This document shows positions 6,514 through 34,873 of a stretch of 64,000 nucleotides of DNA, one piece after another. The notes under the pieces were generated by a model, which saw nothing but the letters and a program-made list of their open reading frames with translations, searched no databases and was not told the DNA's origin. A program made the translations under genes and the position numbers. Position 1 is the stretch's first letter, and every line of letters begins with the position of its first letter. The stretch lies in the IMG/VR virus record IMGVR_UViG_3300048625_000299, positions 62,001-126,000 of that record; one strand, written 5' to 3'.

Positions 6514-8810
6514 TCAAGAGATACCTAGCAATCATGTTGTTAGGAGTCTCTAGTGTTTTTGCTCAAACAGTTCAGACGACTCCTAACCTAATTACGTCAG
6601 GTACGACACATACGTGGTCGGGAGTTACTACGGGCACAATCGGGTCGAATTATATGCCAGCTGGCAGCACGTCGGCACCCCGCTATGACCCTGCCACGAA
6701 TAGCATTAGCTTTAGCTATGGCCAAGCCACCATATCACAGACAACCGCAATTAATAATGCGCTAGCTGGCGTAGGTGCTGGTGTTAAGATTAATGGCTAT
6801 ACCTACAGCTACGACACGCGCAATATGAATGGCGACGATCGTCAAGGTAGCGTGGACACATACACAGTCACTACGAAGATGACGAGTAGCGCAGGGGCTA
6901 CGTTGATGTCGGCAACGCGGACATTCAATACAAAATTTGACTGGACTACCATTAGCGGCACTCAAACATCAACAACGCCATATGCAGTAGGTGACGTCGG
7001 AACGTTGCAATTCAGCGCAGCTGGTAAGGACAGTGGGTTTTGGGGTGGATACTTTGGCCCACAGATTCGTAATGTCGATATGCGACTGAATTATACAGTC
7101 GACCCATGTGCAACGAATCCGGCGTATAATCCATCATGTGCTAACTTCGGCACTGTGCAATATAGTTCCAACTTAGTACCCAACCCATATGGATATGCTG
7201 TTTATGGAAGCTCGATTGAACAGACGTATGCAATAAACCAGGCTTTAGGACAGGCAGGTGCAGGAGCGACGATCCACGGGTTCCAATGGGGATACCAAGC
7301 AAATGCAAATGGACCATATTGCGCAAGTTGGTTTCTCGTATGCTTCGATGAGCGTACCCCAAGCGTACAGACTAACGTGAACATTACAAGCAGCACTGGC
7401 GCAAGTTTGTATAGTATATCGCGCACATACACCAACAGCTATAACACTACTAGCTATCAATACCTATTTCCAACAAGTAGATCAATATCTACGCTGGGTA
7501 ATTTTCAGTTTACAGCGACGACAAATGATGCTGCCTACATTGGGGATATGTGGAGTAAGGCTGTTTATACGCCAGACCCATGCTCCGTCGACCCACTAAG
7601 CAATCAGAGCTGCCCAGGATATGCTGCTGCTTACCAAACTCAGCAATGCACGATCAGTGCGCTCTACAATTCCGCATGCCCAGGATATGCAGTGGCATAT
7701 TTCAATCAGCAATGCACTAACAACCCACTATACAACCAATCATGTTCTGGTTATGCGGCTGCATACCTGATACAACAATGCTCGATCAATCCATTATACA
7801 GCACGACGTGTTCGGGATACGATACCGCATACTTCAACCAACAATGTGCCGCTGACCCTCTATATAACAGCCGTTGTCCAGGGTATACACAAGCATATCA
7901 CGATCAACAGTGCTCAATCAATCCACTATATGCCTCAGACTGTATAGGATATACGCAAGCCTATCATACACAACAATGCACAGCCAACGCTTTGTATGCT
8001 ACTGACTGTCCGGGGTATCAATCTGCATATAAGACACAACAGTGTTCAATTAACGCTCTATATGCTACTGACTGTCCAGGGTATGACCGAGCATACTTGA
8101 ATTCTCGTTGTATACAAGACTCGCTCTATAGTCCGCTATGTGAGGGGTATAAGACTGCATATGCAATTAAGTACTTGACGAATCTCAATCCGGCCGTGAC
8201 TACCGCCGTCAATCAACAACTGACAGAGACTGTAGAAGTACAGAAGGCTGCTGTAGCAGCTGCTGACCCAGTAAGCACAGCGACGACGAATACACCAAGC
8301 ACGACTTCTGCATCGTCGATTTCACCTACTGCTACAATCTCCGCAGTTAGACCAGCGCCGCCTCCTGCTACAGGACCAGTGGCGCAAGCAGAACCGAAGA
8401 AGGACGAAAAGAAGGCAGACGATAAACCACAGGGTGGTGGGGGCAGCAGTGAGCAGAAAGCCGATGGTCCAAAACCAAAGACTGCTAGAGAAGAGCTTGC
8501 AGCCAAGCGTGAAGAAGCTGCTAAAAAGGAAGCTGTTGCTAAAAGTAAAGACCTTGCTAATCAAATGGGTCAGGCTGCCAACTTAGAAGCCCAAAAGGCT
8601 ATACAGAACGTCGTTATACAGGCAATGGGGTTCACGCCTGGGTTTGATCAGTATGGTAAGAGTGTAATGCCGGACGCGCAGTTCTATCGTCCGTTTAGTG
8701 TGTATGGTGGCCAGAAGAATATTGATAGTCGTACAGGTCTCCGAATGTTCGGAGGCAGTGATATGGTGCATGAGGAAATGATCAATTCACAATATCAAAT
8801 AGGAAAATAA
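6510..8810 (+). CDS. large exported protein: duplicated beta-rich domain, Cys repeats, low-complexity and coiled tail
   Basis: Signal peptide; nine 22-aa Cys repeats. Confidence 0.85.
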   Translation: MIKRYLAIMLLGVSSVFAQTVQTTPNLITSGTTHTWSGVTTGTIGSNYMPAGSTSAPRYDPATNSISFSYGQATISQTTAINNALAGVGAGVKINGYTYSYDTRNMNGDDRQGSVDTYTVTTKMTSSAGATLMSATRTFNTKFDWTTISGTQTSTTPYAVGDVGTLQFSAAGKDSGFWGGYFGPQIRNVDMRLNYTVDPCATNPAYNPSCANFGTVQYSSNLVPNPYGYAVYGSSIEQTYAINQALGQAGAGATIHGFQWGYQANANGPYCASWFLVCFDERTPSVQTNVNITSSTGASLYSISRTYTNSYNTTSYQYLFPTSRSISTLGNFQFTATTNDAAYIGDMWSKAVYTPDPCSVDPLSNQSCPGYAAAYQTQQCTISALYNSACPGYAVAYFNQQCTNNPLYNQSCSGYAAAYLIQQCSINPLYSTTCSGYDTAYFNQQCAADPLYNSRCPGYTQAYHDQQCSINPLYASDCIGYTQAYHTQQCTANALYATDCPGYQSAYKTQQCSINALYATDCPGYDRAYLNSRCIQDSLYSPLCEGYKTAYAIKYLTNLNPAVTTAVNQQLTETVEVQKAAVAAADPVSTATTNTPSTTSASSISPTATISAVRPAPPPATGPVAQAEPKKDEKKADDKPQGGGGSSEQKADGPKPKTAREELAAKREEAAKKEAVAKSKDLANQMGQAANLEAQKAIQNVVIQAMGFTPGFDQYGKSVMPDAQFYRPFSVYGGQKNIDSRTGLRMFGGSDMVHEEMINSQYQIGK
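7575..8168 (+). repeat. nine tandem 66-bp (22-aa) coding repeats, QQCxxN(P/A)LYxxxC(P/S)GYxxAY
   Basis: Directly visible in the translation. Confidence 0.92.
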
Positions 8811-8811
8811 A

Positions 8812-9618
8812 ATGTCAGAAGAAAATAACAAACCAGACGAAGAGCTGGATGATGATGCTGAAGGTACTTCGGAAGATCAAGTCGAAGATGAAGCTGTAGG
8901 AGAAGAGGCTGCTGAAGAAGAGTCGACTACGAGTGAGATTGCTGGCGCATTAGCTGGTATGGCCGCTGCCGGTGCTGCCGCGCGCAAGGGCGGTAAGAAG
9001 CCAACTAAGGCAACTGGCAAGACTACTAAAGGCAAGGCAGTTGCTAAGCCAAAGGCTGCTCCAGTAGCAAAGACAGCAGTCGCTAAACCTAAGCCGGTGA
9101 TGCCAGCTGGTACGATCGACGTCAATGCTGAGGTTGAAAAGCTTCAAGGTCTCGCCGACAAGAACAAGGTATGGACTGTGGCTGGATACAGCTTCACTCC
9201 AGCAAAGCTGATGATTCTTGGAACGATTCTATCTACTGCTCTCGGTAGCTTATATGGTGCGTTTGAAGTGTATAAAGACTATCAGGATATGAAAGTCAAG
9301 ATCGCAAAGTATATTGCGCCTGACCTATCTGAAATCTATAAGAAGGTAGAGATTGCAGAGCAGAACTCTGAGAAGTCGGTTCAGTATACTCAAGATATTA
9401 AGAACGACTTGAAGAGTGATATTCGTCGCTTGGAGAGTGTCGTCGATAGCGTTGAGCGTGGTGCGAAACAATCTGCTCGTGATTCTGATCTTGCTGTGCG
9501 TGAAGTTCAACAAGAGCTTCGTAAGAGTGGTAAGGAAACGGATCAATCGATTAAACAAGTACAACGTGAAGTGGATATCAAGATCCAAAAGGCTCTTGAT
9601 AACCCACTCGCCAAATAA
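8812..9618 (+). CDS. single-pass membrane protein with acidic and Lys/Ala-rich N-terminus and C-terminal coiled coil
   Basis: LMILGTILSTALGSLYGAF TM segment; heptad pattern. Confidence 0.8.
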   Translation: MSEENNKPDEELDDDAEGTSEDQVEDEAVGEEAAEEESTTSEIAGALAGMAAAGAAARKGGKKPTKATGKTTKGKAVAKPKAAPVAKTAVAKPKPVMPAGTIDVNAEVEKLQGLADKNKVWTVAGYSFTPAKLMILGTILSTALGSLYGAFEVYKDYQDMKVKIAKYIAPDLSEIYKKVEIAEQNSEKSVQYTQDIKNDLKSDIRRLESVVDSVERGAKQSARDSDLAVREVQQELRKSGKETDQSIKQVQREVDIKIQKALDNPLAK

Positions 9619-21446: not shown

Positions 21447-21983
21447 ATGATCGACGCAGTTTATGTTCTTGGTAAGATGGGCTTGAAGCCTGGTATGTCT
21501 GTTTCACGCGCAATCACGGCTGTCGGGATTGCAATTAATGACAGTTCCGACCAGTTGAAAGCAGCAAACCGAATCATTGTATCACTTGGTGCGAAGCCAG
21601 TCAGCAATACAATCATGGCCGACATCTTTGCCAAGGCATTAGTGGAACAGGCCGTTGTCCAAGGTGCTAGCTATGATGCTGACGATGCATTTGAGGTTGC
21701 GAATGCAAAGTATCTCAAAATCGAACGGACAATGCCATTCGTGTTCGCAGGTAGCGGTGAAAGCACCACGCCAGTATATGGCACGCCTGTTGGAAATGGT
21801 GGCACTAAGAAGCCAAAACAAACAAACGACAAGAAGACACAAGCTCTTGAAATTTTCAATCGCGAGACCAGTAAGGGGTTGCCTAATTCCACAATTGCGC
21901 AGACAATTGCTACTGAGTTAGAAATCACACTGTCCAACGCCCAATACTACGTCAATCGTGTATTCGTAAAGTACTCCAAATGA
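21447..21983 (+). CDS. protein with C-terminal HTH-like domain
   Basis: C-terminus paralogous to 16461-16625. Confidence 0.75.
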   Translation: MIDAVYVLGKMGLKPGMSVSRAITAVGIAINDSSDQLKAANRIIVSLGAKPVSNTIMADIFAKALVEQAVVQGASYDADDAFEVANAKYLKIERTMPFVFAGSGESTTPVYGTPVGNGGTKKPKQTNDKKTQALEIFNRETSKGLPNSTIAQTIATELEITLSNAQYYVNRVFVKYSK

Positions 21984-23320
21984 AAATTCTCAGCATCCTC
22001 GACACGTTGGCCAATGATAATGGCCGCAACTTCAAGATTGATTACTTGACAAAGCACAAGGACAATCTCCTGCTCACACAAGTAGTGTTCTTGGCACTTG
22101 ACACATACACACAATTCTTCATTCGCAAGATTCCTGCATATACACGTGGCCCTGACACTGCAAATCTGAAGTGGGCTCTTGATAAACTATGCGATCTTTC
22201 TTCTCGTACTGTGACAGGCAATGCTGCAATCGCTCATCTTGTGAAGATCTTGGAATCTCTTGAACCAGATGATGCTCAGGTAGTTGAGCGCATCATTGAA
22301 AAAGACTTGAAGTGTGGTGTGGCAGCTTCGACCGTCAATAAGGTATGGCCTAATTTGGTCCACGAATACCCATGCATGCTTGCTAGTCCGTATGAGGAAA
22401 AGCTGGTCAACAAGATTCAATTTCCAGCATACGCGCAATTGAAAATGGACGGGATGCGATTCAATGCCATCGTCAAAAATGGCAAATGTGAGTTCCGCAG
22501 TCGTAATGGTAAATTGATCGACATCCCGTCCGACCTATTCCAACAACCATTCCTCAACATGCATGAGTACTGGGGCACCGATATGGTGTTCGATGGTGAG
22601 TTGCTTGTTGTCGATGTCGCTGGCAAGCCGCTCGATCGCAAGACTGGCAACGGCATCTTGAACAAAGCTGTTAAGGGCACAATGTCTGAGGAAGAAGCTG
22701 TTAATGTTCGTGCAACATTGTGGGACGCACTTCCGGTTGAGAATTTTGCGGTTGGCGTATACAAAGAACAGTACATCGATCGTATTGCTAAGCTATCTAA
22801 TGCGTTGTCACATATGCGTAATCAAACGCCTTTTGGTCACTTGGTTGCTCTAGTGAACCACACAGAAGTTCGTACTCCCGAAGATGCTTCACGTCTATTC
22901 CTCCAGTACCTCAAAAAGGGCGAGGAAGGAATCATCTTGAAAGATCGTTTTGGTATTTGGGAAGATAAGCGTGCCAAGCACCAGATCAAATACAAGGGCG
23001 TGTTTGAGTGCGATTTGGTCTGTGTTGGATGGGATGAGGGTACCGGTCAGAACGTAGGTCGCCTTGGTGCATTGCAGCTGGCTTCGTCATGTGGCAAGCT
23101 GACTGTCGGTGTTGGTACTGGTCTTACCGAAGAAGACCGAATCAATATCGGACGTGATGTAATCGGTAAAGTTGTTGCTGTTGAATTCAACGCAATCATC
23201 GACGATAAGAAAAAGGACACTAAGTCGCTATTTCTTCCGGTGTTTATATGTGTGCGACCGGATAAGGACGAAGCAGACTCACTCACGACTATCGAGAGTA
23301 GTGTAGTAAAACTCCTTTGA
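21980..23320 (+). CDS. ATP-dependent DNA ligase (T4 gp30-like)
   Basis: QLKMDGMR, FDGEL, EGIILK, QIKYK, LFLPVF. Confidence 0.96.
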   Translation: MKILSILDTLANDNGRNFKIDYLTKHKDNLLLTQVVFLALDTYTQFFIRKIPAYTRGPDTANLKWALDKLCDLSSRTVTGNAAIAHLVKILESLEPDDAQVVERIIEKDLKCGVAASTVNKVWPNLVHEYPCMLASPYEEKLVNKIQFPAYAQLKMDGMRFNAIVKNGKCEFRSRNGKLIDIPSDLFQQPFLNMHEYWGTDMVFDGELLVVDVAGKPLDRKTGNGILNKAVKGTMSEEEAVNVRATLWDALPVENFAVGVYKEQYIDRIAKLSNALSHMRNQTPFGHLVALVNHTEVRTPEDASRLFLQYLKKGEEGIILKDRFGIWEDKRAKHQIKYKGVFECDLVCVGWDEGTGQNVGRLGALQLASSCGKLTVGVGTGLTEEDRINIGRDVIGKVVAVEFNAIIDDKKKDTKSLFLPVFICVRPDKDEADSLTTIESSVVKLL

Positions 23321-23944
23321 TCTAGTCTTGAGCCAGTAGTTCATGGTACCATGCACCACACCATAGTCAATCGCAGCCGATTTTACTGAGGGATATTTGC
23401 CGCGCGGGGTCATTATAGGGCGACGCTTCTTTAAGCCTTCTGATCTAATGTCGTGTCTTGTGAAGGCCTTGGACGATTTCCGCTTAGCCCATGGTTTTGA
23501 AGGGTCCTTCATCCAATTGTGGATTGTTGTTATGTCGACGCCATAATGTTTGGCTGCAGCTTTGCGAGATTCGAACACGATACCATCTGGCGAGATGAGT
23601 TGTTTTACTGGACCTCTACTACCTAACGCATACCGATTGCCAATTGCTGTTGGTGGCTTAGTTCCACCTTTGTTGATATTCCAACCGATGCATGGATGCG
23701 GCCTTAGCTGCTCCTCAAACGCATAGCATTCGTGTTCTGGTCCTTCTTTGATATACTCTATAATGAGGTCTTCGTCGATATTATATGCTCGTTGAAAGTG
23801 AAGGTTGTCATGCTTGCCATTGCGTAGCTTAGTTTTGTGGTTTGCAATCCGTCTGGTTGGATTGTTCGTTACGCCAATATACCCCTCCGTCATAAAATCT
23901 GACATATTGGTGTGGCGTATCCAGTATACGTAGTGGTTTGTCAT
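23279..23944 (-). mobile_element. free-standing GIY-YIG (Seg-like) homing endonuclease with two NUMOD1-like HTH repeats
   Basis: YVYWIR...GYIGVT, GWNINKGG; AAGGAG SD; TATAAATA late promoter at 23963-23970. Confidence 0.88.
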
Positions 23945-25329: not shown

Positions 25330-25410
25330 CTTCGTAGCACGGACCCTATATAATTAACCCACTGCTAAAGATAGACTTTAGCAGGCCAACTATTCAAAGG
25401 AGCTTTGAAT
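25326..25410 (+). promoter_or_regulatory. sigma70 promoter TTGACT-17-TATAAT plus two-hairpin leader (GATAGAC-loop hairpin; SD/AUG hairpin)
   Basis: CTGCTAAAG-ATAGA-CTTTAGCAG; ATTCAAAG-GAG-CTTTGAAT. Confidence 0.85.
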
Positions 25411-26428
25411 GTCAAAAAAATACGACACTCTCGTCCTCATCGGACGCTTTCAACCGTTTCATAACGCTCACCTTGAGATCATCAAGCGTAGCACTGCGCT
25501 CTGTAATAAACTGATTGTTATTACGGGCAGCGCAAAACAGCCTCGCACATACAAGAATCCGTTCACCAGCTTTGAACGCGAGATGATGATCAAGCGTGCG
25601 ACTGCAGGTCTCGCATTGACTATCAATGTCGTCGAAAACATCGACACAATCTACAACGACCAAGCCTGGGCTGTCCGGATACAATCCATCGTGAACACAT
25701 TGGCATGCGACGGTGATAAGATCGGCATCATCGGCCACAAGAAAGATGACAGCTCATTCTACTTGGATATGTTTCCGCAATGGGGATATGAGAACGTCGA
25801 AGAGATTGCACCGCTGAGTGCTGTCAATATTCGCGACCTGTACTTCAAGCGCAACTGTAATCTCGAATTCATTCGCGGGGTGGTACCTCAAACTACTTTC
25901 GAAATCTTGCTGGACTTCAAGCAAAGCGAAGAGTATGAACAAATCATCCGTGAGCGCGAGTTCGTAGAGAACTACAAAAAGCAGTACGCATCGCTTCCAT
26001 ATCCTCCAATCTTCAGTACTGCTGATGCTGTAGTGATCCAATCCGGCCATGTGCTGATGATTCGTCGTCGTGCTGAGCCAGGCAAAGGGTTGTGGGCGCT
26101 TCCCGGCGGATATGTGAACGCAAATACCGACAAGTCTGTTGAAGCTGCAATGCTCCGAGAGCTCCGCGAAGAAACAAAGATCAAAGTTCCCGAGCCAGTC
26201 CTGCGTGGTAATATCGTTCGCAGTAAGGTGTTCGATGCTGTCGATCGTAGTCCTCGTGGCCGCATTATCACTCATGCATTCCACATTCAGTTGCCAGACG
26301 GCGAGCTGCCAAAGGTCAAAGGATCTGATGATGCTGAAAAGGCACGTTGGGTTCCGATTGCTGAAGTGAAGAGCGAAGACTGCTTCGAAGACCACTTTGA
26401 AATTCTCCAACACTTTTTGGGAGCTTAA
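25409..26428 (+). CDS. natV: bifunctional NMN adenylyltransferase / ADP-ribose Nudix hydrolase (NadM-Nudix, NatV-like)
   Basis: GRFQPFHNAH, KNPFT, Nudix box GG...RELREET, GSDDA. Confidence 0.95.
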   Translation: MSKKYDTLVLIGRFQPFHNAHLEIIKRSTALCNKLIVITGSAKQPRTYKNPFTSFEREMMIKRATAGLALTINVVENIDTIYNDQAWAVRIQSIVNTLACDGDKIGIIGHKKDDSSFYLDMFPQWGYENVEEIAPLSAVNIRDLYFKRNCNLEFIRGVVPQTTFEILLDFKQSEEYEQIIREREFVENYKKQYASLPYPPIFSTADAVVIQSGHVLMIRRRAEPGKGLWALPGGYVNANTDKSVEAAMLRELREETKIKVPEPVLRGNIVRSKVFDAVDRSPRGRIITHAFHIQLPDGELPKVKGSDDAEKARWVPIAEVKSEDCFEDHFEILQHFLGA

Positions 26429-26748: not shown

Positions 26749-26943
26749 ATGGTACGAATTATCGATGCAACACCACATCAGAGTGTGGTCAAAAAGAAGG
26801 TCTGCCGTCACTGTGGCGTGACGTTGGAGTATGTTCCTAACGACATTCAAGAACGACGAGTTACTGATTATGATGGCAGTAGCGAGCTGATCAAGTACAT
26901 CGAGTGTCCTGCTTGCAAAACACACGTTGATGTGAGGTACTAA
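26749..26943 (+). CDS. small zinc-ribbon protein
   Basis: CRHCG...CPAC. Confidence 0.7.
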   Translation: MVRIIDATPHQSVVKKKVCRHCGVTLEYVPNDIQERRVTDYDGSSELIKYIECPACKTHVDVRY

Positions 26944-26944
26944 T

Positions 26945-27889
26945 ATGTGGAAAAATGTAAACGTCTTTGAAGATGAAAAAGAGCACGTTAAGAAGTATGT
27001 TTTCGAGAAAGATGACATCGCTATCGAGTCCGTTCTTTATCGTTATCCTACTTACGATGAACGCACTGTTCTCTGCATTAGTACCATGTGCGGATGTCCA
27101 ATGGGCTGTCGCTTTTGTGGAACTGGTGATTATTTTGTTCGTAGCCTTACTGCGGATGAAATTGTAGGCCAAGCTGAATACATCCTCGAAACACAAATCG
27201 GCGGACTGAATCCTCGTGACATCAAGAAGTTGCAGATCATGGTGATGAGTATGGGCGAGCCTGCTTTGAACAAAGCTCTGGAAGAAGCATTCGATCGTCT
27301 GTATGCAAAGTACCCAAATGCAGCACTGCTGATTAGCTCAAGCGGTCCTAAGGTTAGCTACCAATGGATCATCGAAATGAGCAAGCGGATTCCGACTGTC
27401 GGTTTGCAATTCAGCATTCACGAGAGTACAGACGAAGCACGCGACAAGTTGATTCCATTCGATAAGAAGTTGAACCTGCAAGAGATTGCTGATGTTGGCG
27501 TTCGCTGGCACTTGGATACTGGCCGTAAGCCATATTTCAACTATTGCGCTCACGAGGGCAACGATAAAGATGAGGACGTCCAACGACTACTCAAGTTGTA
27601 CCATCCACGCATCTGGGAAGCGACTGTCTCTGTCATTTGTGAACGCGATGCTCATGCAGAAGCAACGAACGACAAGCAACGCAACTTGGCTATTGAATTT
27701 GGTAACAAGCTGCTTGCTGAAGGTTACAACGTCCGTGTGTTCGATCCGGCTGGTCAGGATACAATCGGTGGTGGTTGTGGTCAGTTGTGGTATGTTCAAG
27801 ACTGGATGAAGGACCATCCAGAGCACGTCAAGCCATCTGTTGGTTGTGGTATGCAAAAGGTCCACACACCAAAAGAATGGAACGTATGA
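26945..27889 (+). CDS. RlmN/Cfr-family radical SAM methyltransferase, N-terminally shortened
   Basis: LCISTMCGCPMGCRFCGTG, MSMGEP, FSIH, GQDTIGGGCGQL. Confidence 0.9.
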   Translation: MWKNVNVFEDEKEHVKKYVFEKDDIAIESVLYRYPTYDERTVLCISTMCGCPMGCRFCGTGDYFVRSLTADEIVGQAEYILETQIGGLNPRDIKKLQIMVMSMGEPALNKALEEAFDRLYAKYPNAALLISSSGPKVSYQWIIEMSKRIPTVGLQFSIHESTDEARDKLIPFDKKLNLQEIADVGVRWHLDTGRKPYFNYCAHEGNDKDEDVQRLLKLYHPRIWEATVSVICERDAHAEATNDKQRNLAIEFGNKLLAEGYNVRVFDPAGQDTIGGGCGQLWYVQDWMKDHPEHVKPSVGCGMQKVHTPKEWNV

Positions 27890-28677
27890 AGTTTTTGATC
27901 CAATACAATCTAATGGCAGAGTCGCAACTCGAAGCAGTTAAGTCTGCAGCTCTGCCATATCCTCACCAGTATGTTGGAGTGATTCCGTTTTCAAATGAGA
28001 TCACCGCAGCAGAGGGTGAAGAGATTGTTGGTACCGATTACATTCCATATGGGTCAACGCTGATGTCGACGATTGGCCTAGATTTGGGATGGAAGGGATT
28101 GCACTTCGATCTCGAACAGTTCAATTACGAAGCTGCAGTCGCCAATCGGGATGATATGCTGAATGATGGCGATATTATGACTGTCGAAGAGACTATCGAT
28201 TTCATGCGCGCCAGCACTCAAGAACAATGGTTCATCCGTCCTTCACTCGATCTGAAGCATTTTGCTGGGCAGGTAATCGAACGCATAGAGTGTGTGAAGT
28301 GGTTAACACAAGCACTCGGTTGTTCATCATCTGAGACGAAACGGATGTACAAAGACATGAAGATTGTCGTTGCAACACCACAAAACATTCAAGCCGAATG
28401 GCGTTGGTTTGTGGTCGGAGGCAAAGTGGTCGATGGGTCAATGTACCGCTCACATGGTCAATTGATCAAGCTGCATGAGACTGATCCAAAAGTAATCGCT
28501 GAAGCACAAACGTTTGCTGATAAGTGGTTGCCAAACCAAAACGTCGTGATGGACTTGGCGCTTGTCGATGATGAATTGAAGGTAATTGAATTCAACTGTA
28601 TCAACTGCAGTGGGTTCTACAATCACGATGTTCGTAAAATATTTGATGCACTGTATATGGAGAGTACAAAATGCTAA
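27886..28677 (+). CDS. ATP-grasp protein (R2K/DUF4343-like)
   Basis: FIRP...KHFAG, EWRWFVV, MDLA, IEFNCINCSGFY. Confidence 0.82.
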   Translation: MKFLIQYNLMAESQLEAVKSAALPYPHQYVGVIPFSNEITAAEGEEIVGTDYIPYGSTLMSTIGLDLGWKGLHFDLEQFNYEAAVANRDDMLNDGDIMTVEETIDFMRASTQEQWFIRPSLDLKHFAGQVIERIECVKWLTQALGCSSSETKRMYKDMKIVVATPQNIQAEWRWFVVGGKVVDGSMYRSHGQLIKLHETDPKVIAEAQTFADKWLPNQNVVMDLALVDDELKVIEFNCINCSGFYNHDVRKIFDALYMESTKC

Positions 28678-29156
28678 AGCATGTAAAAGGCAACTTACTC
28701 GATCTAGCTGAGGCTGGTCATTTTGATGTGGTTGTTCAAGGCTGCAATTGCTTCAACGCAATGGGCGGAGGGATCGCACGTGAGATTCGCGAGCGCTATC
28801 CAGTAGCCGCGGCCGCTGACAATAAGACTGTTAAGGGCGATTACAATAAGCTGGGCAATTGGACCAGCTGCCCAATAATTGTCGGAGACTTGGGCTATGT
28901 TTCTAGCTTCGTTATCATCAACGCATACACTCAATATAATATGAGCACTGGTCAAGATGTGTTCGAGTATGCAGCGTTTGAGCTGATCCTCCAAAAGCTA
29001 CTCTACACGTATGGAGATAAGCGAATTGGATTTCCGTTCATTGGTATGGGCCTTGCCCGTGGTGATAAGCAACGAATCATCGGAATGCTTGAATGGTTTG
29101 CAGATGAAATTGAGAAGCGTGGCGGTAGTGCAACGCTAGTGGAATTCCAGCCATGA
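28671..29156 (+). CDS. macrodomain ADP-ribose processing protein
   Basis: GNLL, GCNCFNAMGGGIA, NAYTQ, PFIGMGLARG. Confidence 0.9.
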   Translation: MLKHVKGNLLDLAEAGHFDVVVQGCNCFNAMGGGIAREIRERYPVAAAADNKTVKGDYNKLGNWTSCPIIVGDLGYVSSFVIINAYTQYNMSTGQDVFEYAAFELILQKLLYTYGDKRIGFPFIGMGLARGDKQRIIGMLEWFADEIEKRGGSATLVEFQP

Positions 29157-29650
29157 ACATAGTCAAGTCCCCAAACGAGTATACCACTCGCAATAAATTC
29201 TCAATCTTCCTTGCTGGATCAATTGAGATGGGCATGGCGGTAGATTGGCAACAATCGATCGCTGATGCGTTGTATGGCATTGATGGAATACAGCTACTGA
29301 ACCCACGTCGTGATGATTGGGATTCTAGCTGGGCACAAACGATCGAGAATCCACAATTTGCTGAGCAAGTAAGATGGGAGCTGACAGCACTCGAACGATC
29401 TGATTTGATCATCTACTACTTTGCACCAGGCACACAAAGTCCAATCTCGTTGCTTGAGCTGGGACTCTATGCAAACCATACAAAGAACATCTGGGTGTGT
29501 TGTCCAGAAGGATTCTGGCGTAAGGGCAATATCGAGATCGTCTGCCAACGATACATGATTCCATTCTTTGATGATTTAGATCACATGGTGGACGATCTGA
29601 GGTACTATCTTCCGATTTGGACGGAAGATGGATATGAGCAGTTGACATAA
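29153..29650 (+). CDS. nucleoside 2-deoxyribosyltransferase-like protein
   Basis: IFLAGSI, NPRR, QVRWE, SPISLLELG. Confidence 0.88.
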   Translation: MNIVKSPNEYTTRNKFSIFLAGSIEMGMAVDWQQSIADALYGIDGIQLLNPRRDDWDSSWAQTIENPQFAEQVRWELTALERSDLIIYYFAPGTQSPISLLELGLYANHTKNIWVCCPEGFWRKGNIEIVCQRYMIPFFDDLDHMVDDLRYYLPIWTEDGYEQLT

Positions 29651-29725
29651 CAATGGGGTTATGCTATACTGTAATCAAGCCCTCGCGATAGACGTGAGGC
29701 ATTTTAACTGTTAAGGAGATTAACA
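29642..29725 (+). promoter_or_regulatory. sigma70 promoter TTGACA-17-TATACT plus the same two-hairpin leader
   Basis: CCTCGCG-ATAGA-CGTGAGG; TGTTAA-GGAGA-TTAACA. Confidence 0.85.
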
Positions 29726-31122
29726 TGAAACTGAGCAAAAACATTCTACTGAACACAGACAGCTACAAAGTGTCAATGTGGAAGCAATACCCTGTTGGAA
29801 CAACTGGCGTATTTTCTTACATCGAATCGCGTGGCGGTCGTTATGATCAAACAGTGATGTTTGGTCTGCAAGCGTTCATCAAGGAGTACTTACTTGACCC
29901 CATTACACAGTCCGACATCGATATCGCCGAAGAGATTCTTCTCGCACACGGAGAGCCATTTAATCGTAGCGGCTGGCAGTATATCCTCGACAAGCACGAC
30001 GGATATCTCCCCGTCGTCATCCGAGCAGTCCCCGAGGGTACTGTGGTACCGGTTAAGAATGTCCTCGCAACCATCGAGAACACAGATCCCAACGTACCGT
30101 GGCTGACTACATGGCTCGAGACTCCCTTGCTTCGTGCGATCTGGTATCCAACTACTGTGGCAACACAGAGCTGGTCGATTCGCAAAGTGATTTTGGATTA
30201 TTTGGAGAAGACTGGTGACCCTGCTCTTATCGATTTTAAGTTACACGACTTTGGTGCTCGCGGTGTTAGTTCCCTTGAGTCCGCTGGCATTGGCGGCGCC
30301 GCGCACCTCGTTAATTTCATGGGTACCGATACTGTTACCGGTTTGTTGTATGCTCGTGAGTATTACAACGCTGGTATTAGTGGGTTTTCAATTCCTGCAG
30401 CCGAGCACAGCACAATCACAAGTTGGGGCCGTGACGGAGAAGTCGACGCCTACCGAAACATGCTTACAAATTTCGCTCGGCCCGGGTCCATTGTTGCAGT
30501 CGTTTCCGACAGCTACGATGTATTCAATGCCGCTAGCAAATTGTGGGGAGAAGAGCTCCGTCAGCAAGTGATTGATAGCGGTGCTACTGTAGTGATTCGT
30601 CCTGATAGTGGTGACCCTGTTGAAGTCAACCGCAAGTTGATTGAGATCTTAGGAGAAAAGTTTGGATACACTACAAACGCCAAAGGATTCAAAGTCCTCA
30701 ATAATGTTCGCCTCATCCAGGGGGACGGTGTCAATGAGTTATCCATCCGCAGTATCCTTGGGGCACTCATGGCAATGGGATGGTCGGCAGATAATATTGC
30801 ATTCGGTATGGGCGGTGCCTTGCTCCAGCAAGTTGACCGAGATACCCAGAAGTTTGCAATGAAATGTTCTTCTGCGAAGATCAATGACGTGTGGGTCGAT
30901 GTACAAAAAGATCCAGTCACTGATAGTGGCAAGAAGTCGAAGGCAGGTCGAGTGACTCTTTGGAAGAGTGGCGGCGAATGGATCAGTAGCGTTGAAAAGC
31001 CAGCTGGCTGGCACGATAAAGCAACTGGTGAGTTTGTTGAAGTGCTGGAAACAGTATACGCTAACGGAAAGTTGATTAACGAATATACATTCGACAACAT
31101 CCGAGCAAGAGCTCGCAAATAA
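29725..31122 (+). CDS. nadV: nicotinamide phosphoribosyltransferase
   Basis: TDSYK, HDFGARG, AAEHS, VSDSYD, IRPDSG, QGDG, GMGGALLQ. Confidence 0.97.
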   Translation: MKLSKNILLNTDSYKVSMWKQYPVGTTGVFSYIESRGGRYDQTVMFGLQAFIKEYLLDPITQSDIDIAEEILLAHGEPFNRSGWQYILDKHDGYLPVVIRAVPEGTVVPVKNVLATIENTDPNVPWLTTWLETPLLRAIWYPTTVATQSWSIRKVILDYLEKTGDPALIDFKLHDFGARGVSSLESAGIGGAAHLVNFMGTDTVTGLLYAREYYNAGISGFSIPAAEHSTITSWGRDGEVDAYRNMLTNFARPGSIVAVVSDSYDVFNAASKLWGEELRQQVIDSGATVVIRPDSGDPVEVNRKLIEILGEKFGYTTNAKGFKVLNNVRLIQGDGVNELSIRSILGALMAMGWSADNIAFGMGGALLQQVDRDTQKFAMKCSSAKINDVWVDVQKDPVTDSGKKSKAGRVTLWKSGGEWISSVEKPAGWHDKATGEFVEVLETVYANGKLINEYTFDNIRARARK

Positions 31123-31657: not shown

Positions 31658-31852
31658 ATGGAATACACATTAGTGATTTGGACAGTTGTTGCTGCATTTG
31701 GTACAGGAGCTGGCACATATAGGCCGCAAGAGTATCGAGATTGGCGACCGCTAGCCGTTTTCAATAACGGTGGCGCTCAATCAATGAACCAGTGTCAGGC
31801 AGCCGCTGAACAATTAAAGCTGCAAAAGTTTGAATGTATCAGAACCAAGTGA
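31658..31852 (+). CDS. small exported Cys-pair protein
   Basis: Hydrophobic N-terminus; C...C pair. Confidence 0.6.
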   Translation: MEYTLVIWTVVAAFGTGAGTYRPQEYRDWRPLAVFNNGGAQSMNQCQAAAEQLKLQKFECIRTK

Positions 31853-31862
31853 AGGAAAGAAA

Positions 31863-32903
31863 ATGCGTAAACTTGCATCCATTCGTCGGATCGACGAACT
31901 GAACCCTATTGAGGGTGCCGACAAAATCGAAGTAGCAACCGTTGGTGGTTGGAAAGTCGTGTGTCAAAAAGGTCTCTATAATGTCGGAGATCTTGCTGTG
32001 TACTTCGAGATCGACTCGTGGATTCCATCTGCTGTTGCTCCGTTTCTGACAAAGGACGGCCACTTCCCCAAAGTGTTCGAGGGTGTTGAAGGTGAACGTC
32101 TAAAGACAATCCGCTTGCGCGGACAATTGTCTCAAGGTCTGTTGATGCCTATACACAACGACAAGACTGGCACATATTTGATGGTCTACACAGATGAAAC
32201 TGGTGAATATTCGCTGACTGTAGCCGAAGGTGATGATGTATCTGAGCCTCTTGGTATCCTGAAATGGGAGAAGGCAATCCCTGCTCAGCTCGCTGGCATT
32301 TCTCGTGGCAACTTCCCAACTTTGATTCCAAAGACCGACCAAGAGCGTGTGCAAAACTTGAAGAAAGAGATTGCTGCTGCTCAAGGACAAGTCTACGAAG
32401 TGACGGAAAAGCTGGAAGGCTCATCGATGACTTGCTATGTAATTGATGGTGAGTTCGGAGTATGCTCCCGTAACCTCAACCTCAAGGAAACTGAGGGCAA
32501 CTCATTCTGGAATGCAGCTCGCGACAATGACCTCGAGCAAAAAATGCTTGCTCGTCAGTACGACTTTGCAATCCAAGGTGAGTTGATTGGTCCTGGCGTT
32601 CAAGGTAATATCTACAAATTGACAAAGCCTGAGTTCTATGTGTTTGACATCTATGATGTTAAGGACGGCGAGTATATGAATCCAGCTGCACGTCGTCAAT
32701 TGGTTGAGTCTCTTGGCCTGAAGCATGTACCGATTCTGGACGATATGTATGTCCTTAACGATGATGTAGAACAACTGTTGACGTTAGCCGAAGGCAAGTC
32801 TAGAATGTTTGATACAGAACGAGAAGGCATCGTGTTCAAACAGAATGACGGTGGCATGACGTTCAAAGCGATCTCGAACAAGTACCTATTAAACGAGAAG
32901 TGA
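31863..32903 (+). CDS. RNA ligase, DRB0094 family
   Basis: N-terminal PIEGADKIE module; EKLEGSS, QGEL, EGIVFK, FKAISN. Confidence 0.93.
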   Translation: MRKLASIRRIDELNPIEGADKIEVATVGGWKVVCQKGLYNVGDLAVYFEIDSWIPSAVAPFLTKDGHFPKVFEGVEGERLKTIRLRGQLSQGLLMPIHNDKTGTYLMVYTDETGEYSLTVAEGDDVSEPLGILKWEKAIPAQLAGISRGNFPTLIPKTDQERVQNLKKEIAAAQGQVYEVTEKLEGSSMTCYVIDGEFGVCSRNLNLKETEGNSFWNAARDNDLEQKMLARQYDFAIQGELIGPGVQGNIYKLTKPEFYVFDIYDVKDGEYMNPAARRQLVESLGLKHVPILDDMYVLNDDVEQLLTLAEGKSRMFDTEREGIVFKQNDGGMTFKAISNKYLLNEK

Positions 32904-32922
32904 TTTAAGTTTTCTCCCCTTT

Positions 32923-32948
32923 GCGCCGGCTTGACCGGCGTTCTTTTT
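32923..32948 (+). terminator. rho-independent terminator candidate
   Basis: CGCCGG-CTTGA-CCGGCG then TTCTTTTT. Confidence 0.75.
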
Positions 32949-33302
32949 ATGAACAATCCATTACTATTCATCACAGACATGCTCGCCGCAGCAAAGAAGT
33001 CGTTTCAGGCTGCTGTGGAAGAGCGTAAAAAGAGAGAGCTCAATGCTGAGCGCAATCTCATCGCAAAGCATTTCAACAACTACTACACATACCGCCACCG
33101 GTTCGATACATCAAGTAATGAGCGTTTGGATGGAACTGGGATGTGGGGGTTCACACCATTAAAAGGAAATGCGTGGATGTGTCCGACGTGCAATAAAATC
33201 CACTTGGCATCAAGCTGTAGTGCATTTTCCGGTTTACAATATCCACATTGCTGTGAGTATAGATCACACCACAGGCTATACAACGACATCAGAACGCAAT
33301 GA
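32949..33302 (+). CDS. hypothetical Cys/His-rich protein
   Basis: CPTC...C...HCC. Confidence 0.6.
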   Translation: MNNPLLFITDMLAAAKKSFQAAVEERKKRELNAERNLIAKHFNNYYTYRHRFDTSSNERLDGTGMWGFTPLKGNAWMCPTCNKIHLASSCSAFSGLQYPHCCEYRSHHRLYNDIRTQ

Positions 33303-33826
33303 CGCCACTATCGGAACACCTCAGACGACGACACTTGGATATTGAGCTCCACCGTCCAGTGATAGACGAGGTGGATAGAATTGCTACGTTCTATTTGTGG
33401 AACCTCAGCGGTGCGATTGTAGGATTCCAGCAATACCGTCCAGAGGGCGAAAAGAAGATCAACAACAATCCCAAAGAAGGCAAGTACTACACCTATAAGA
33501 AGCAACCTACGATTGCAGTATGGGGCGTAGAATCGCTTTACCTCTCACCGCACGTAGTGTTTATTACGGAAGGTGTATTCGACGCTGCTAGGCTGACTGA
33601 ACGAGGATATAGCGCGTTGGCAATGTTGACTAATAATCCAACATCAGACTACCGCAATTGGTTGACATTCTTGAACAGAACTGTTGTTGCAGTATGTGAT
33701 AATGATAAGGCTGGCAAGAAGCTAGCAGCATTTGGTGATGTTGCAATCTTCACCGAAGACAAAGACCTTGGTGATAGTGATGATGAATATGTCACCAACT
33801 TGCTATTGCCATACAAATTGGACTAA
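33299..33826 (+). CDS. stand-alone TOPRIM (primase-like) protein
   Basis: ITEGVFDA, CDNDKAG, KDLGD. Confidence 0.82.
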   Translation: MTPLSEHLRRRHLDIELHRPVIDEVDRIATFYLWNLSGAIVGFQQYRPEGEKKINNNPKEGKYYTYKKQPTIAVWGVESLYLSPHVVFITEGVFDAARLTERGYSALAMLTNNPTSDYRNWLTFLNRTVVAVCDNDKAGKKLAAFGDVAIFTEDKDLGDSDDEYVTNLLLPYKLD

Positions 33827-33834
33827 AGGATAAT

Positions 33835-34401
33835 ATGGTTATGAAAACATTTATTACAAGCGATATCCATTTCGGACACAAGAACATTATGAGCTTCTGT
33901 CCAGTATCACGTGCTCGCTTCAAGGGCGACGTGGACTACATGAACGCTCAGATCATCCAAGACTGGAACAATATGATTGGTCCAGACGACTTGGTGTATA
34001 TCTTGGGCGACGTTGCATTCTGCTCATGGGAGAAGGCTGTTGGCTTCTTGCGTTCGATGAACGGTCGCAAGATTTTGATCAAGGGTAACCATGACAGCAA
34101 GCTCGTCAAGAGTCCAGAGTTCGTTGCCTGCTTCGAAAGCATTCACGACTACTTGACAATCACATACAATGGCACTCGAGTGTCGATGTTCCACTATCCA
34201 ATTGCTGAGTGGGATCAGATGCATCGAGGTGCTGTCCACTTCTATGGTCACTTGCATGGTGGCACTAGCGGATTGGAAAAGTACCGAGCAATCGATGTTG
34301 GTATGGATGGCAATATGTGCTACCCACATGACATGGATGTTGCTGTGGCAACTGCATTGAAAGGTGAAATCAAAAAGCACCATGACAAATATGGGAACTA
34401 A
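33835..34401 (+). CDS. calcineurin-like metallophosphoesterase
   Basis: SDIHFGH, LGD, GNHD, GHLH. Confidence 0.93.
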   Translation: MVMKTFITSDIHFGHKNIMSFCPVSRARFKGDVDYMNAQIIQDWNNMIGPDDLVYILGDVAFCSWEKAVGFLRSMNGRKILIKGNHDSKLVKSPEFVACFESIHDYLTITYNGTRVSMFHYPIAEWDQMHRGAVHFYGHLHGGTSGLEKYRAIDVGMDGNMCYPHDMDVAVATALKGEIKKHHDKYGN

Positions 34402-34402
34402 T

Positions 34403-34873
34403 ATGAGCAAATTAAAATGCATTCAATTGGTTGGCGTGCCTGGATCAGGAAAGTCAACGTGGATTAAAACACAAACGATGATCGACAACTTCGTTGTTGC
34501 GTCTACGGACAACTTTGTTGAGCAGCATGCTGCTAGCGAAGGTAAGACGTATAACGAAGTGTTCAAGGATTACATGCCGATTGCTGTAAGGTTGATGGCG
34601 AATCAGGTGTTAGTTGCGCAAGCGAATAACAAGAACATCATCTGGGATCAGACGTCCATGAGCGTTGCATCTCGTAAGAAGAAGTTCAACACGATTCCTA
34701 ACTACGAGCACATCGCTGTTGTGTTCCCTGTTCCTGGTGAGGAAGAGCTGGCACGTCGCTTGGCAAGCCGTCCAGGAAAGTTGATTCCAGATCACGTTAT
34801 GAAAAGCATGATCGATAGCTTTGAGATGCCGACCCTCGAAGAAGGGTTCACTGAAGTTCACGTGTTGCTGTAA
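34403..34873 (+). CDS. P-loop polynucleotide-kinase-like protein (AAA_33)
   Basis: GVPGSGKST, WDQT, RxxxR lid, PTLEEGF. Confidence 0.88.
   Translation: MSKLKCIQLVGVPGSGKSTWIKTQTMIDNFVVASTDNFVEQHAASEGKTYNEVFKDYMPIAVRLMANQVLVAQANNKNIIWDQTSMSVASRKKKFNTIPNYEHIAVVFPVPGEEELARRLASRPGKLIPDHVMKSMIDSFEMPTLEEGFTEVHVLL

What the first reader, a model, noticed from the sequence alone, without database searches (positions are those of the whole stretch)
26945..27889. Phage RlmN/Cfr-type radical SAM methyltransferase lacking the N-terminal domain, inside the NAD island
Seen: CxxxCxxC, the resolving Cys (LCIS), MGEP and the methyl-carrier Cys (GGCGQL) are all retained, but the protein starts only about 40 aa before the first Cys. 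Established: RlmN and Cfr methylate C2 or C8 of 23S A2503, and RlmN also modifies tRNA A37. Inference: altered substrate range, such as tRNA protection against anticodon nucleases, ribosome remodelling or a free adenine nucleotide; possibly a module with the coupled ATP-grasp, macrodomain and NDT genes.
Basis: partly seen in the sequence, partly recalled or inferred. Interest (0 to 1): 0.65.

Follow-up and report, generated by a model that had tools for sequence, protein, structure and literature searches.

The report
Minimal phage RlmN-like methylase in NAD operons
This jumbo-phage gene belongs to a large, mostly viral and so far undescribed branch of the RlmN/Cfr radical-SAM methylase family; the branch has lost the RNA-recognition parts, sits again and again inside NAD+ salvage operons, and probably methylates something other than the ribosome.

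Summary
Window 26945-27889 (+) encodes a 314-aa radical SAM protein with every catalytic hallmark of RlmN/Cfr: C44, C51/C55/C58, MGEP and GGGC278GQL. It begins where E. coli RlmN residue 79 begins, so the N-terminal domain is absent.

It is neither an ordinary RlmN nor a Cfr. It scores 100 bits against a cut-off of 290. It belongs to a monophyletic clade separated from RlmN+Cfr by a very long branch. The clade has about 300 stretches in IMG/VR and 114 in species genomes, and every member examined has the short N-terminus. It has also lost the arginine pair that includes the tRNA-contacting R206, and the basic C-terminal tail.

Its commonest immediate neighbours are NAD+ salvage genes of three different routes: NadV/NadM, Adps/Namat-like, and PncA/PncB/NadD/NadE. 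This holds in phages and in Saccharibacteria chromosomes. Natural fusions exist to a Nudix domain, inside a NAMPT-NMNAT operon, and to a dGTPase-like HD domain.

The best reading, unproven, is C-methylation of an NAD/ADPR-family adenine nucleotide as an accessory to NAD-centred counter-defence (about 0.4). A tRNA or other RNA target is the main rival (about 0.3). The Macro and NDT-like neighbours recur; the ATP-grasp does not.

The parts
26945..27889 (+). Short-form class A radical SAM methyl synthase, 314 aa (P0001): the finding itself
27074..27076 (+). Codon of Cys44, equivalent to the resolving Cys118 of E. coli RlmN, seven residues before the cluster motif
   Evidence: present in at least 90% of 73 sequences
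27095..27118 (+). C51-x3-C55-x2-C58, the ligands of the [4Fe-4S] cluster
   Evidence: invariant in 73 sequences
27251..27262 (+). M103-G-E-P106, a SAM-binding motif shared with RlmN and Cfr
27776..27778 (+). Codon of Cys278 in GGGCGQL, equivalent to the methyl-carrying Cys355 of RlmN
25409..26428 (+). NadM-type bifunctional NMNAT / Nudix ADP-ribose pyrophosphatase
   Evidence: NF003788, 369 bits against a cut-off of 354
26749..26943 (+). 64-aa zinc-ribbon protein (CRHCG...CPACK; phrog_2834). Its stop lies one base before the rSAM start. It is conserved in the window's own lineage.
27886..28677 (+). R2K-clade ATP-grasp protein. Its ATG overlaps the rSAM stop (ATGA). Found only in the nearest relatives.
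28671..29156 (+). Macro-domain protein, Poa1p/Adpp-like, a likely ADP-ribose-1''-phosphate phosphatase
   Evidence: paradigm from the preprint read
29153..29650 (+). Nucleoside 2-deoxyribosyltransferase-like protein (PF15891)
29725..31122 (+). NadV / NAMPT, nicotinamide phosphoribosyltransferase
   Evidence: PRK09198, 656 bits against a cut-off of 405
31830..34873 (+). Adjacent RNA end-healing and sealing genes: RNA ligase of the DRB0094 family (31830-32903), phosphoesterase (33835-34401) and a PNK-like P-loop kinase (34364-34873)

Best explanation
The gene encodes a catalytically competent member of a third, mostly phage-borne clade of class A radical SAM methyl synthases.

Shown:
- It keeps the RlmN/Cfr machinery: one [4Fe-4S] cluster on C51/C55/C58, a methyl-carrying Cys278 and a resolving Cys44.
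- It has shed the parts that RlmN uses to hold large RNAs.

Inferred:
- It uses the same ping-pong chemistry. SAM methylates Cys278. A second SAM gives the 5'-deoxyadenosyl radical. The Cys-CH2 radical adds to an electron-poor ring carbon, and Cys44 resolves the adduct.
- The substrate is the adenine (C2 or C8) of an NAD/ADP-ribose-family nucleotide, or of a signal or adduct derived from one, rather than 23S rRNA A2503.
- It acts as an accessory enzyme of phage NAD+ reconstitution. It would make an NAD-derived molecule refractory to, or inhibitory for, host NAD-targeting immunity. The partnering Nudix hydrolase would process the product or the substrate.
For: Catalytic set and fold.

Distinct clade:
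- It is monophyletic (SH-aLRT 100), with branches of 3.4 and 3.1 substitutions per site to RlmN+Cfr.
- It scores 100 bits against the RlmN cut-off of 290.

Loss of RNA elements:
- The model starts at RlmN residue 79.
- The loop and the RR pair that includes R206 are replaced by YPNA. R206 hydrogen-bonds tRNA G29 (PMC5130265).
- The basic C-terminal tail is absent.

Context:
- In 76 lineages at 75% identity, a core NAD gene is directly adjacent in 15 and within 2-3 genes in 7.
- The top immediate neighbours are Nudix, NAMPT, PncA and NadE.
- The gene lies between NAD genes of three non-homologous routes.
- The NAD-linked state needs 18 changes on the tree for 20 positive rows.
- 11 of 12 complete phage records of about 175 kb or more that carry the gene also carry a NAPRTase-family gene. 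The reported background for NadV in jumbo phages is 33% (PMC9503650).
- In Saccharibacteria it sits in a chromosomal operon, MetRS-Nudix-PncB-PncA-rSAM-Nudix-NadE.
- A relative only 31% identical sits beside NAMPT_N genes.

Fusions:
- rSAM::Nudix lies directly before NAPRTase-family and NMNAT genes. It was seen on two contigs.
- rSAM::dGTPase-like HD was seen in two assemblies.

Precedent: accessory enzymes in NARP operons are known, such as the Macro phosphatase Adpp (preprint 10.64898/2026.01.28.702374).
Against: - No activity or substrate was tested.
- Every characterised class A enzyme acts on RNA.
- The model matches the tRNA-bound RlmN conformers best.
- 52 of 76 lineages have no NAD gene within 8 kb, and 0 of 9 complete phage genomes of about 43-144 kb carry a NAPRTase-family gene. 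The enzyme therefore does not need phage NAD genes.
- tRNA arrays lie within about 1 kb in at least six loci, and RNA-repair genes lie in the locus in 12 lineages.
- The reaction costs two SAM per methyl and is slow in RlmN (own knowledge). Bulk methylation of a millimolar NAD pool is therefore implausible; only a low-abundance target fits.
- Counter-defence genes cluster in islands, so part of the linkage could be co-location.
Confidence: 0.4

Rival explanations
1. It is an RNA methylase with a new target. It would put m2A or m8A on a tRNA anticodon-loop adenine such as A37, or on another small RNA. That would protect or tune the translation apparatus during infection, for example against anticodon nucleases. 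It would travel with RNA-repair and NAD genes because all are counter-defence cargo.
For: - Family precedent: RlmN methylates tRNA A37 (PMC5130265).
- The fold is closest to tRNA-bound RlmN.
- In Stenotrophomonas phage ANB28 the gene lies inside the tRNA cluster.
- tRNA arrays lie within about 1 kb in L040, L086, L108, L122 and L142.
- RtcB, RNA ligase, Thg1-like and phosphoesterase genes lie in the locus in 12 of 76 lineages.
- The window's own genome carries 40 tRNA genes and an RNA ligase/kinase/phosphatase set.
- A slow, costly enzyme suits a target of low copy number.
Against: - The N-terminal domain, the R206/R207 patch and the basic tail are all lost. RlmN does not modify a bare anticodon stem-loop 17-mer, so it needs distal contacts.
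- Immediate neighbours are NAD enzymes far more often than RNA genes.
- Both fusion partners are nucleotide hydrolases.
- The chromosomal NAD operon of Saccharibacteria holds no RNA-repair genes.
Confidence: 0.3
2. It is a functional equivalent of RlmN or Cfr on 23S rRNA A2503, only trimmed.
For: - The catalytic residues and the fold are shared.
- The Saccharibacteria, Methanobacterium and Woesearchaeota MAGs that carry it have no canonical RlmN.
- IMG names it a 23S rRNA (adenine2503-C2)-methyltransferase.
Against: - It is far below all equivalog cut-offs and outside both clades.
- Five of five bacteria that carry it also have a canonical RlmN.
- It is absent from plasmids, where Cfr resides.
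- It occurs sporadically and is mostly viral.
- The RNA-contact elements are lost.
Confidence: 0.07
3. It methylates dATP or adenine in DNA, giving a new phage DNA modification that evades restriction.
For: - A fusion to a dNTP-triphosphohydrolase-like HD domain exists.
- In temperate phages the gene lies among SSB, YqaJ, primase-helicase and DNA methylase genes.
- One relative sits near Lar and PAPS-reductase-like genes.
Against: - This does not explain the NAD linkage.
- Genome-wide modification by a two-SAM radical enzyme is costly.
- No precedent is known.
Confidence: 0.08
4. The linkage is passive. The gene would be unrelated cargo that happens to sit in variable accessory islands, or a decaying copy.
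For: Two thirds of the lineages lack nearby NAD genes. One relative, L023, is frameshifted.
Against: - Strong purifying selection: 24 invariant columns in 73 sequences, including the three cluster cysteines, and both catalytic cysteines kept in at least 90%.
- Repeated adjacency in independent lineages.
- The domain fusions.
Confidence: 0.05

Closest known systems
RlmN (dual-specificity 23S rRNA A2503 / tRNA A37 C2-methyltransferase; PDB 3rfa, 5hr6, 5hr7)
   Same: The radical SAM core fold (Z 29.4, 279 residues aligned), the CxxxCxxC motif, the resolving Cys seven residues upstream, MGEP, and the C-terminal CGQL methyl-carrier loop.
   Different: There is no N-terminal domain (RlmN residues 1-78). 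The loop and the RR pair with R206 are replaced by YPNA, LIPxNP is replaced by SVICER, and there is no basic tail. Identity is 21-23%, the score is 100 bits against a cut-off of 290, and it forms a separate clade. It is mostly viral and coexists with the host's RlmN.
Cfr (23S rRNA A2503 C8-methyltransferase; PDB 9p0p)
   Same: The same class A chemistry set. It is the best sequence match in the PDB (E 2.5e-21).
   Different: The score is about 91 bits against cut-offs of 468-550. Cfr groups with RlmN in the tree, not with this clade. No member of this clade was found on plasmids, and there is no N-terminal domain.
Accessory enzymes of phage NAD+ reconstitution pathways, such as the Macro phosphatase Adpp of NARP1-AP
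   Same: An extra enzyme gene inserted in NARP-type operons, present in a subset of phages.
   Different: Adpp has a shown activity (ADPR-1''-P to ADPR). This enzyme has none shown, belongs to an unrelated family, and accompanies NARP1-like, NARP2 and Preiss-Handler gene sets alike.
Hen1 of the bacterial Pnkp/Hen1 RNA repair system (own knowledge)
   Same: This is the analogy for the RNA rival: a methylase that travels with RNA end-healing and sealing enzymes and immunises the repaired RNA.
   Different: Hen1 is a 2'-O-methyltransferase of another fold. No repair-junction role was shown here.

Membership tests
Class A radical SAM methyltransferases (RlmN/Cfr superfamily) | A single CxxxCxxC [4Fe-4S]/SAM motif, plus two conserved catalytic cysteines: one just upstream of the motif and one in a C-terminal CGQL loop | tested here: met
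   C44, C51/C55/C58 and C278 are present. The cluster cysteines are invariant, and C44 and C278 are kept in at least 90% of 73 sequences.
Class A radical SAM methyltransferases (RlmN/Cfr superfamily) | RlmN-type partial TIM-barrel fold | tested here: met
   Model pLDDT is 92.8. Z is 29.4 to 5hr6, 27.7 to 6fz6 and 19.9 to Cfr; the next families reach at most 14.8.
Class A radical SAM methyltransferases (RlmN/Cfr superfamily) | Methylation of an sp2 carbon through a methyl-cysteine intermediate | not testable with these tools
   Needs enzyme assays.
RlmN (TIGR00048 equivalog) | Score at or above the curated cut-off of 290 bits | tested here: not met
   100.4 bits, matching profile positions 71-342 only.
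RlmN (TIGR00048 equivalog) | N-terminal accessory (HhH2-like) domain before the radical SAM core | tested here: not met
   The model starts at RlmN residue 79. This holds across the relatives examined. The domain is not encoded by the upstream ORFs.
RlmN (TIGR00048 equivalog) | The tRNA/rRNA-contacting basic residues, R206 and its neighbour | tested here: not met
   SKRR and equivalents in RlmN and Cfr correspond to YPNA in the short clade, and a loop is deleted. The role of R206 comes from PMC5130265.
RlmN (TIGR00048 equivalog) | Groups with RlmN in a tree | tested here: not met
   The short clade is one side of a branch with support 100, outside RlmN+Cfr.
Cfr (TIGR04432 / NF000424) | Score at or above the curated cut-offs (468-550 bits) and placement in the Cfr clade | tested here: not met
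   90-91 bits. Cfr, Cfr(C) and Cfr(D) form their own clade beside RlmN.
Cfr (TIGR04432 / NF000424) | C8 methylation of A2503 with resistance to PhLOPSA antibiotics | not testable with these tools
   Needs assays in a laboratory strain.
Phage NAD+ reconstitution modules (NARP1 / NARP2) | Core enzymes present next to the gene (NadV plus NadM for NARP2) | tested here: met
   NadM at 25409-26428 and NadV at 29725-31122, both at or near the equivalog cut-offs.
Phage NAD+ reconstitution modules (NARP1 / NARP2) | The rSAM is a described component of the pathway | tested here: not met
   The words 'radical' and 'RlmN' do not occur in the NARP1/2, NARP3, aRES/NARP1-AP and RyDEP papers, nor 'radical SAM' and 'RlmN' in the two Aravind-lab surveys.

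The most novel reading that the evidence does not exclude
The short clade is the first radical SAM enzyme that C-methylates a free dinucleotide cofactor or a product of it. The target would be NAD+, ADP-ribose or an ADPR-derived immune signal. The attacked ring would be adenine C2 or C8 or, by the same radical-addition chemistry, the electron-poor pyridinium ring. The product would be a modified NAD-family molecule that blocks or escapes TIR/SIR2-type NADase immunity. That would add a chemical-modification layer to the NAD-centred arms race between phages and bacteria.
Probability: 0.3. Interest if true: 0.9.

Novelty: new variant of a known kind. Interest (0 to 1): 0.72.

Why it matters
Class A radical SAM methylases are known only as RlmN and Cfr, both acting on RNA; Cfr is a major multidrug-resistance determinant.

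A third clade exists that is large and mostly viral, lacks the RNA-recognition modules, and is embedded in NAD+ salvage operons. Databases label its members as RlmN, which is probably wrong.

The clade offers a directly testable candidate for a new step in the NAD+-centred conflict between phages and bacterial immunity. That field currently knows pathways that resynthesise NAD+, enzymes that degrade signals, and sponges, but no enzyme that chemically modifies the cofactor.

If the target turns out to be RNA instead, the clade would be a minimal RlmN. It would show how little protein is needed for target recognition, and it would point to a phage strategy of editing the translation apparatus.

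Cultured phages carry the gene: Salmonella phage Arash, Stenotrophomonas phages ANB28 and BUCTxx99, Xanthomonas phage JGB6, several Vibrio phages and Aeromonas phage Ahp1. Genetic tests are therefore feasible.

Tried and rejected
- **Nearby isolates.** Megablast of 5 kb around the gene against phage records found nothing. No close isolate exists; the DNA ligase is only 39-42% identical to those of PA5oct-like and other phages.
- **Split N-terminal domain.** The three small ORFs upstream of the gene gave no hit to RlmN or Cfr models. Rejected at HMMER sensitivity.
- **Longer relatives as fusions.** ORFs of 391-484 aa with N-terminal extensions showed no extra Pfam domain and are probably start-codon artefacts in GC-rich DNA. 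The C-terminal 260 aa of L149 stays unexplained.
- **Isoelectric point as a test of RNA binding.** The short clade has a median pI of 5.55, but the RlmN and Cfr references span about 5.5 to 9.4, and two crude ORF calls gave 10.5-11.3. Not discriminating.
- **Defence-protein similarity.** The PADLOC library gave no hit for the rSAM.
- **Promoter and terminator scan.** The number of sites does not exceed that in shuffled sequence. The strong-looking sites before NadM and NadV are therefore only noted.
- **Sequencing runs.** No read-based check of expression or habitat was made, and read laying was not used.
- **Papers not held.** The structural papers on RlmN (PMC5629962, PMC3506250), the review PMC4326810 and the 2012 de Souza and Aravind paper could not be read. 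Statements about the fold of the N-terminal domain rest on my own knowledge. The contact of R206 rests on PMC5130265.
- **Complex prediction.** No complex-prediction job was sent, because the report does not claim that two of these proteins bind.
- **Missed NaPRTases.** The PF04095 scan misses PncB-type NaPRTases. The record of L045 scored none, although a PncB-like ORF lies in the locus. The tally of 29 of 50 is therefore a lower bound.
Full report
**1. Observation**

The window holds an ATG-started ORF at 26945-27889 on the + strand, giving 314 aa. The opposite strand is closed by stops.

Sequence and fold evidence agree:
- Pfam sees only the generic Radical_SAM domain.
- NCBIfam places it nearest RlmN (TIGR00048, 100 bits, E 9e-29) and Cfr (about 91 bits). 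Both are far below their cut-offs of 290 and 468-550 bits, and both matches begin at profile position 65-71.
- The best solved relatives are Cfr 9p0p, a Sphaerobacter RlmN-like protein and E. coli RlmN.
- An AlphaFold2 model built on 73 relatives is confident, with pLDDT 92.8 and pTM 0.91.
- The model aligns to tRNA-bound E. coli RlmN with Z 29.4, rmsd 2.9 A and 279 residues. Model residues 1-304 correspond to RlmN residues 79-371.
- Cfr gives Z 19.9, and the next radical SAM families reach at most 14.8.

So the enzyme is an RlmN/Cfr-type core that starts exactly where the N-terminal domain of RlmN ends.

**2. The truncation is a property of a clade**

Relatives in 25 loci all start about 40 residues before the first Cys, and the open frame ends within about 60 bases upstream in most of them. 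The three small ORFs upstream in the window have no similarity to RlmN or Cfr models.

An alignment with RlmN and Cfr shows further losses:
- The loop and the arginine pair SKRR (E. coli R206/R207) are replaced by YPNA. R206 makes a bidentate hydrogen bond to tRNA G29 (PMC5130265).
- The motif LIPxNP becomes SVICER.
- The basic C-terminal tail of enterobacterial RlmN is replaced by a conserved aromatic and acidic helix, WYVQDWMK.

The basic residues that stay invariant (R40, R66, R166, K175, R194, R264) are shared with RlmN and Cfr. No new basic patch is evident from the sequence.

**3. Size and position of the clade**

- A profile scan found 299 related stretches in IMG/VR and 114 in one-genome-per-species bacterial and archaeal genomes. 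These are 45-60% identical to the window protein and span Pseudomonadota, Actinomycetota, Bacillota, Bacteroidota, Saccharibacteria and archaeal MAGs.
- Isolated phages of Stenotrophomonas, Xanthomonas, Vibrio, Salmonella and Aeromonas carry it. No plasmid does.
- Among 1.84 billion representative proteins, 71 match at E of 1e-30 or better. More distant short forms, 30-40% identical, continue below that.
- ESM Atlas clusters nearest to it are 82-89% viral and unnamed.
- In a maximum-likelihood tree, the 76 short sequences form one side of a branch with SH-aLRT 100. Branches of 3.4 and 3.1 substitutions per site separate them from a group in which Cfr lies beside RlmN. Host taxa are jumbled within the short clade.
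- Five of five bacteria that carry a short copy also have a canonical RlmN above the cut-off.
- Three Saccharibacteria, one Methanobacterium and one Woesearchaeota MAG have only the short form.
- IMG nevertheless names the window's own 90% cluster '23S rRNA (adenine2503-C2)-methyltransferase'.

**4. The window's neighbourhood**

The window lies in a complete 234,864-bp virus record with terminal repeats. That genome holds 40 tRNA genes and a tmRNA-like gene, all outside the window.

Around the gene, all on the + strand, the order is:
- ATP-dependent DNA ligase.
- NadM-type NMNAT-Nudix.
- Three small ORFs, the last a zinc ribbon that ends one base before the rSAM start.
- The rSAM.
- An R2K ATP-grasp protein whose start overlaps the rSAM stop as ATGA.
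- A Macro protein whose best solved relative is yeast Poa1p, an ADPR-1''-phosphate phosphatase.
- A PF15891 NDT-like protein.
- NadV/NAMPT.
- Then an RNA ligase, a phosphoesterase and a PNK-like kinase.

These assignments rest.

**5. Neighbourhoods across the family**

I called ORFs in 169 loci, clustered them, and annotated the recurrent clusters. The most frequent neighbours, by number of loci, are:
- Nudix or NMNAT-Nudix: 37-40.
- NAMPT: 26.
- Macro: 17-19.
- PncA-like isochorismatase: 15.
- NadE: 14.
- NDT-like: 13.
- PncB: 8-13.
- NadD: 8-10.
- Prs/Adps-like: 7.
- NADAR: 6.
- NadA: 3.

After dereplication into 76 lineages at 75% identity:
- A core NAD gene is directly adjacent in 15 lineages, within 2-3 genes in 7, further away within the locus in 2, and absent within 8 kb in 52.
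- Nudix, NAMPT, PncA and NadE head the list of immediate neighbours.

The gene often lies between NAD genes, in varied orders:
- PncA-PncB-rSAM-NadE.
- NadE-rSAM-Nudix-PncA.
- NadM-rSAM-x-NadV.
- NadM-NadV-rSAM.
- Prs-like-NAPRT-like-rSAM.

The NAD-linked state is scattered over the protein tree, needing 18 changes for 20 positive rows.

In Saccharibacteria the operon is flanked by MetRS, TatD and a cysteine desulfurase, so it is chromosomal.

Among phage records that carry the gene:
- 29 of 50 hold a NAPRTase-family gene.
- 11 of the 12 complete records of about 175 kb or more do. The reported background for NadV in jumbo phages is 33% (PMC9503650).
- None of the 9 complete records of about 43-144 kb does.

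From the coordinates, seven of twelve complete jumbo genomes have the two genes within 2 kb, in at least four independent lineages. This count includes the window's own genome.

Other recurrent contexts are tRNA arrays, which lie within about 1 kb in L001, L040, L086, L108, L122 and L142, and RNA-repair genes, which occur in 12 lineages. The ATP-grasp accompanies the gene only in L004 and L005.

**6. Fusions**

Two natural fusions link short-form enzymes to nucleotide hydrolases.
- P0022 (468 aa, 42% identical to the window protein) carries a C-terminal Nudix domain related to that of NadM. It sits in the order Nudix - rSAM::Nudix - NAPRTase-family - NMNAT. It was seen on two contigs.
- P0093 (759 aa, 35% identical) carries a dGTP-triphosphohydrolase-like HD domain. 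It was seen in two assemblies.

A third relative, P0094 (31% identical), lies next to NAMPT_N genes.

**7. Interpretation**

Shown:
- The catalytic equipment for the methyl-cysteine and radical mechanism of class A enzymes is intact and under strong purifying selection.
- The RNA-recognition parts are gone.
- The clade is distinct and mobile.
- Its strongest genomic partner is NAD+ and ADP-ribose metabolism. The partnership holds whichever salvage route is used and whether the carrier is a phage or a cell.

Inferred: the substrate is an adenine nucleotide of the NAD/ADPR family or a derivative of low abundance, and the enzyme is an accessory of NAD-centred counter-defence. The Macro phosphatase Adpp is a precedent for accessory genes in NARP operons (preprint 10.64898/2026.01.28.702374).

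I give this reading about 0.4. The main rival is a new RNA target, most simply a tRNA anticodon-loop adenine, at about 0.3. It is favoured by family precedent, by the tRNA and RNA-repair contexts, and by the cost and slowness of the chemistry. It is weakened by the lost contacts and by the fusion partners. Ordinary A2503 methylation, a DNA or dATP modification, and passive hitchhiking are less likely.

**8. Prior knowledge**

The words 'radical' and 'RlmN' do not occur in the NARP1/2 preprint, the NARP3 paper, the RyDEP preprint, the aRES/NARP1-AP preprint and its supplements, or a jumbo-phage NAD paper. 'Radical SAM' and 'RlmN' do not occur in the two Aravind-lab surveys. General searches found nothing on this clade. 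The library lacks most subscription journals, so this is absence in what could be read, not proof.

**9. Verdict**

The finding is a new variant of a known enzyme kind, with a real chance of a categorically new substrate.

Noticed in passing
G000 genome 24922-37641 and 149874-150283 (outside the window, which is G000 62001-126000): The phage genome carries 40 tRNA genes in one array, covering nearly all amino acids, and a permuted tmRNA-like gene with the tag ANDEAFLMAA.
   Followed up: partly
window 28671-29156: The best solved relative of the Macro protein is yeast Poa1p, an ADPR-1''-phosphate phosphatase. That is the same homolog reported for the phage Adpp of NARP1-AP. Here it accompanies a NARP2-type NadV/NadM pair rather than NARP1.
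   Followed up: partly
window 23279-23944 (- strand): A GIY-YIG / I-TevI-like homing endonuclease ORF lies on the opposite strand and overlaps the 3' end of the DNA ligase gene (21980-23320) by about 40 bases.
   Followed up: no
window 26749-26943: A 64-aa protein has two knuckles, CRHCG and CPACK, 31 residues apart. The spacing is rubredoxin-like, but there is no Rubredoxin Pfam hit. It lies directly upstream of the radical SAM gene, so it could be a metal-binding partner or electron carrier.
   Followed up: no
L034, L045, L128, L129, L157 (around 8001-8900 in most): These contigs, some classed as viral, carry a whole Preiss-Handler set (PncA, PncB, NadD, NadE), and three others carry NadA. 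That would be a further NAD+ route in mobile elements besides the published NARP1-3. The viral status of several of these contigs was not verified.
   Followed up: partly
L189 2043-3449; L190 724-3003: Natural fusions of the short radical SAM enzyme to a Nudix domain and to a dGTPase-like HD domain.
   Followed up: yes
Tree: L109, L115, L119 with L104, L105, L108, L121: Saccharibacteria copies group with copies from Actinomycetota, the usual hosts of these epibionts. This hints at gene exchange between partner organisms or through shared phages.
   Followed up: no
L023 8001-8894: One relative is frameshifted after about residue 225 and has lost the C-terminal CGQL loop. This is either a pseudogene or a sequencing error.
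   Followed up: no
window 31830-34873: A likely RNA end-healing and sealing set lies just downstream of the NAD genes: an RNA ligase of the DRB0094 family, a calcineurin-like phosphoesterase and a PNK-like P-loop kinase. A stand-alone Toprim (primase-like) ORF at 33299-33826 lies between them.
   Followed up: partly
L195 3080-4686 and 7009-9514: Beside a short-form enzyme only 31% identical to the window's, two QueC/PP-loop genes and two or three ORFs with only the NAMPT N-terminal domain suggest a split or rearranged NAMPT.
   Followed up: no
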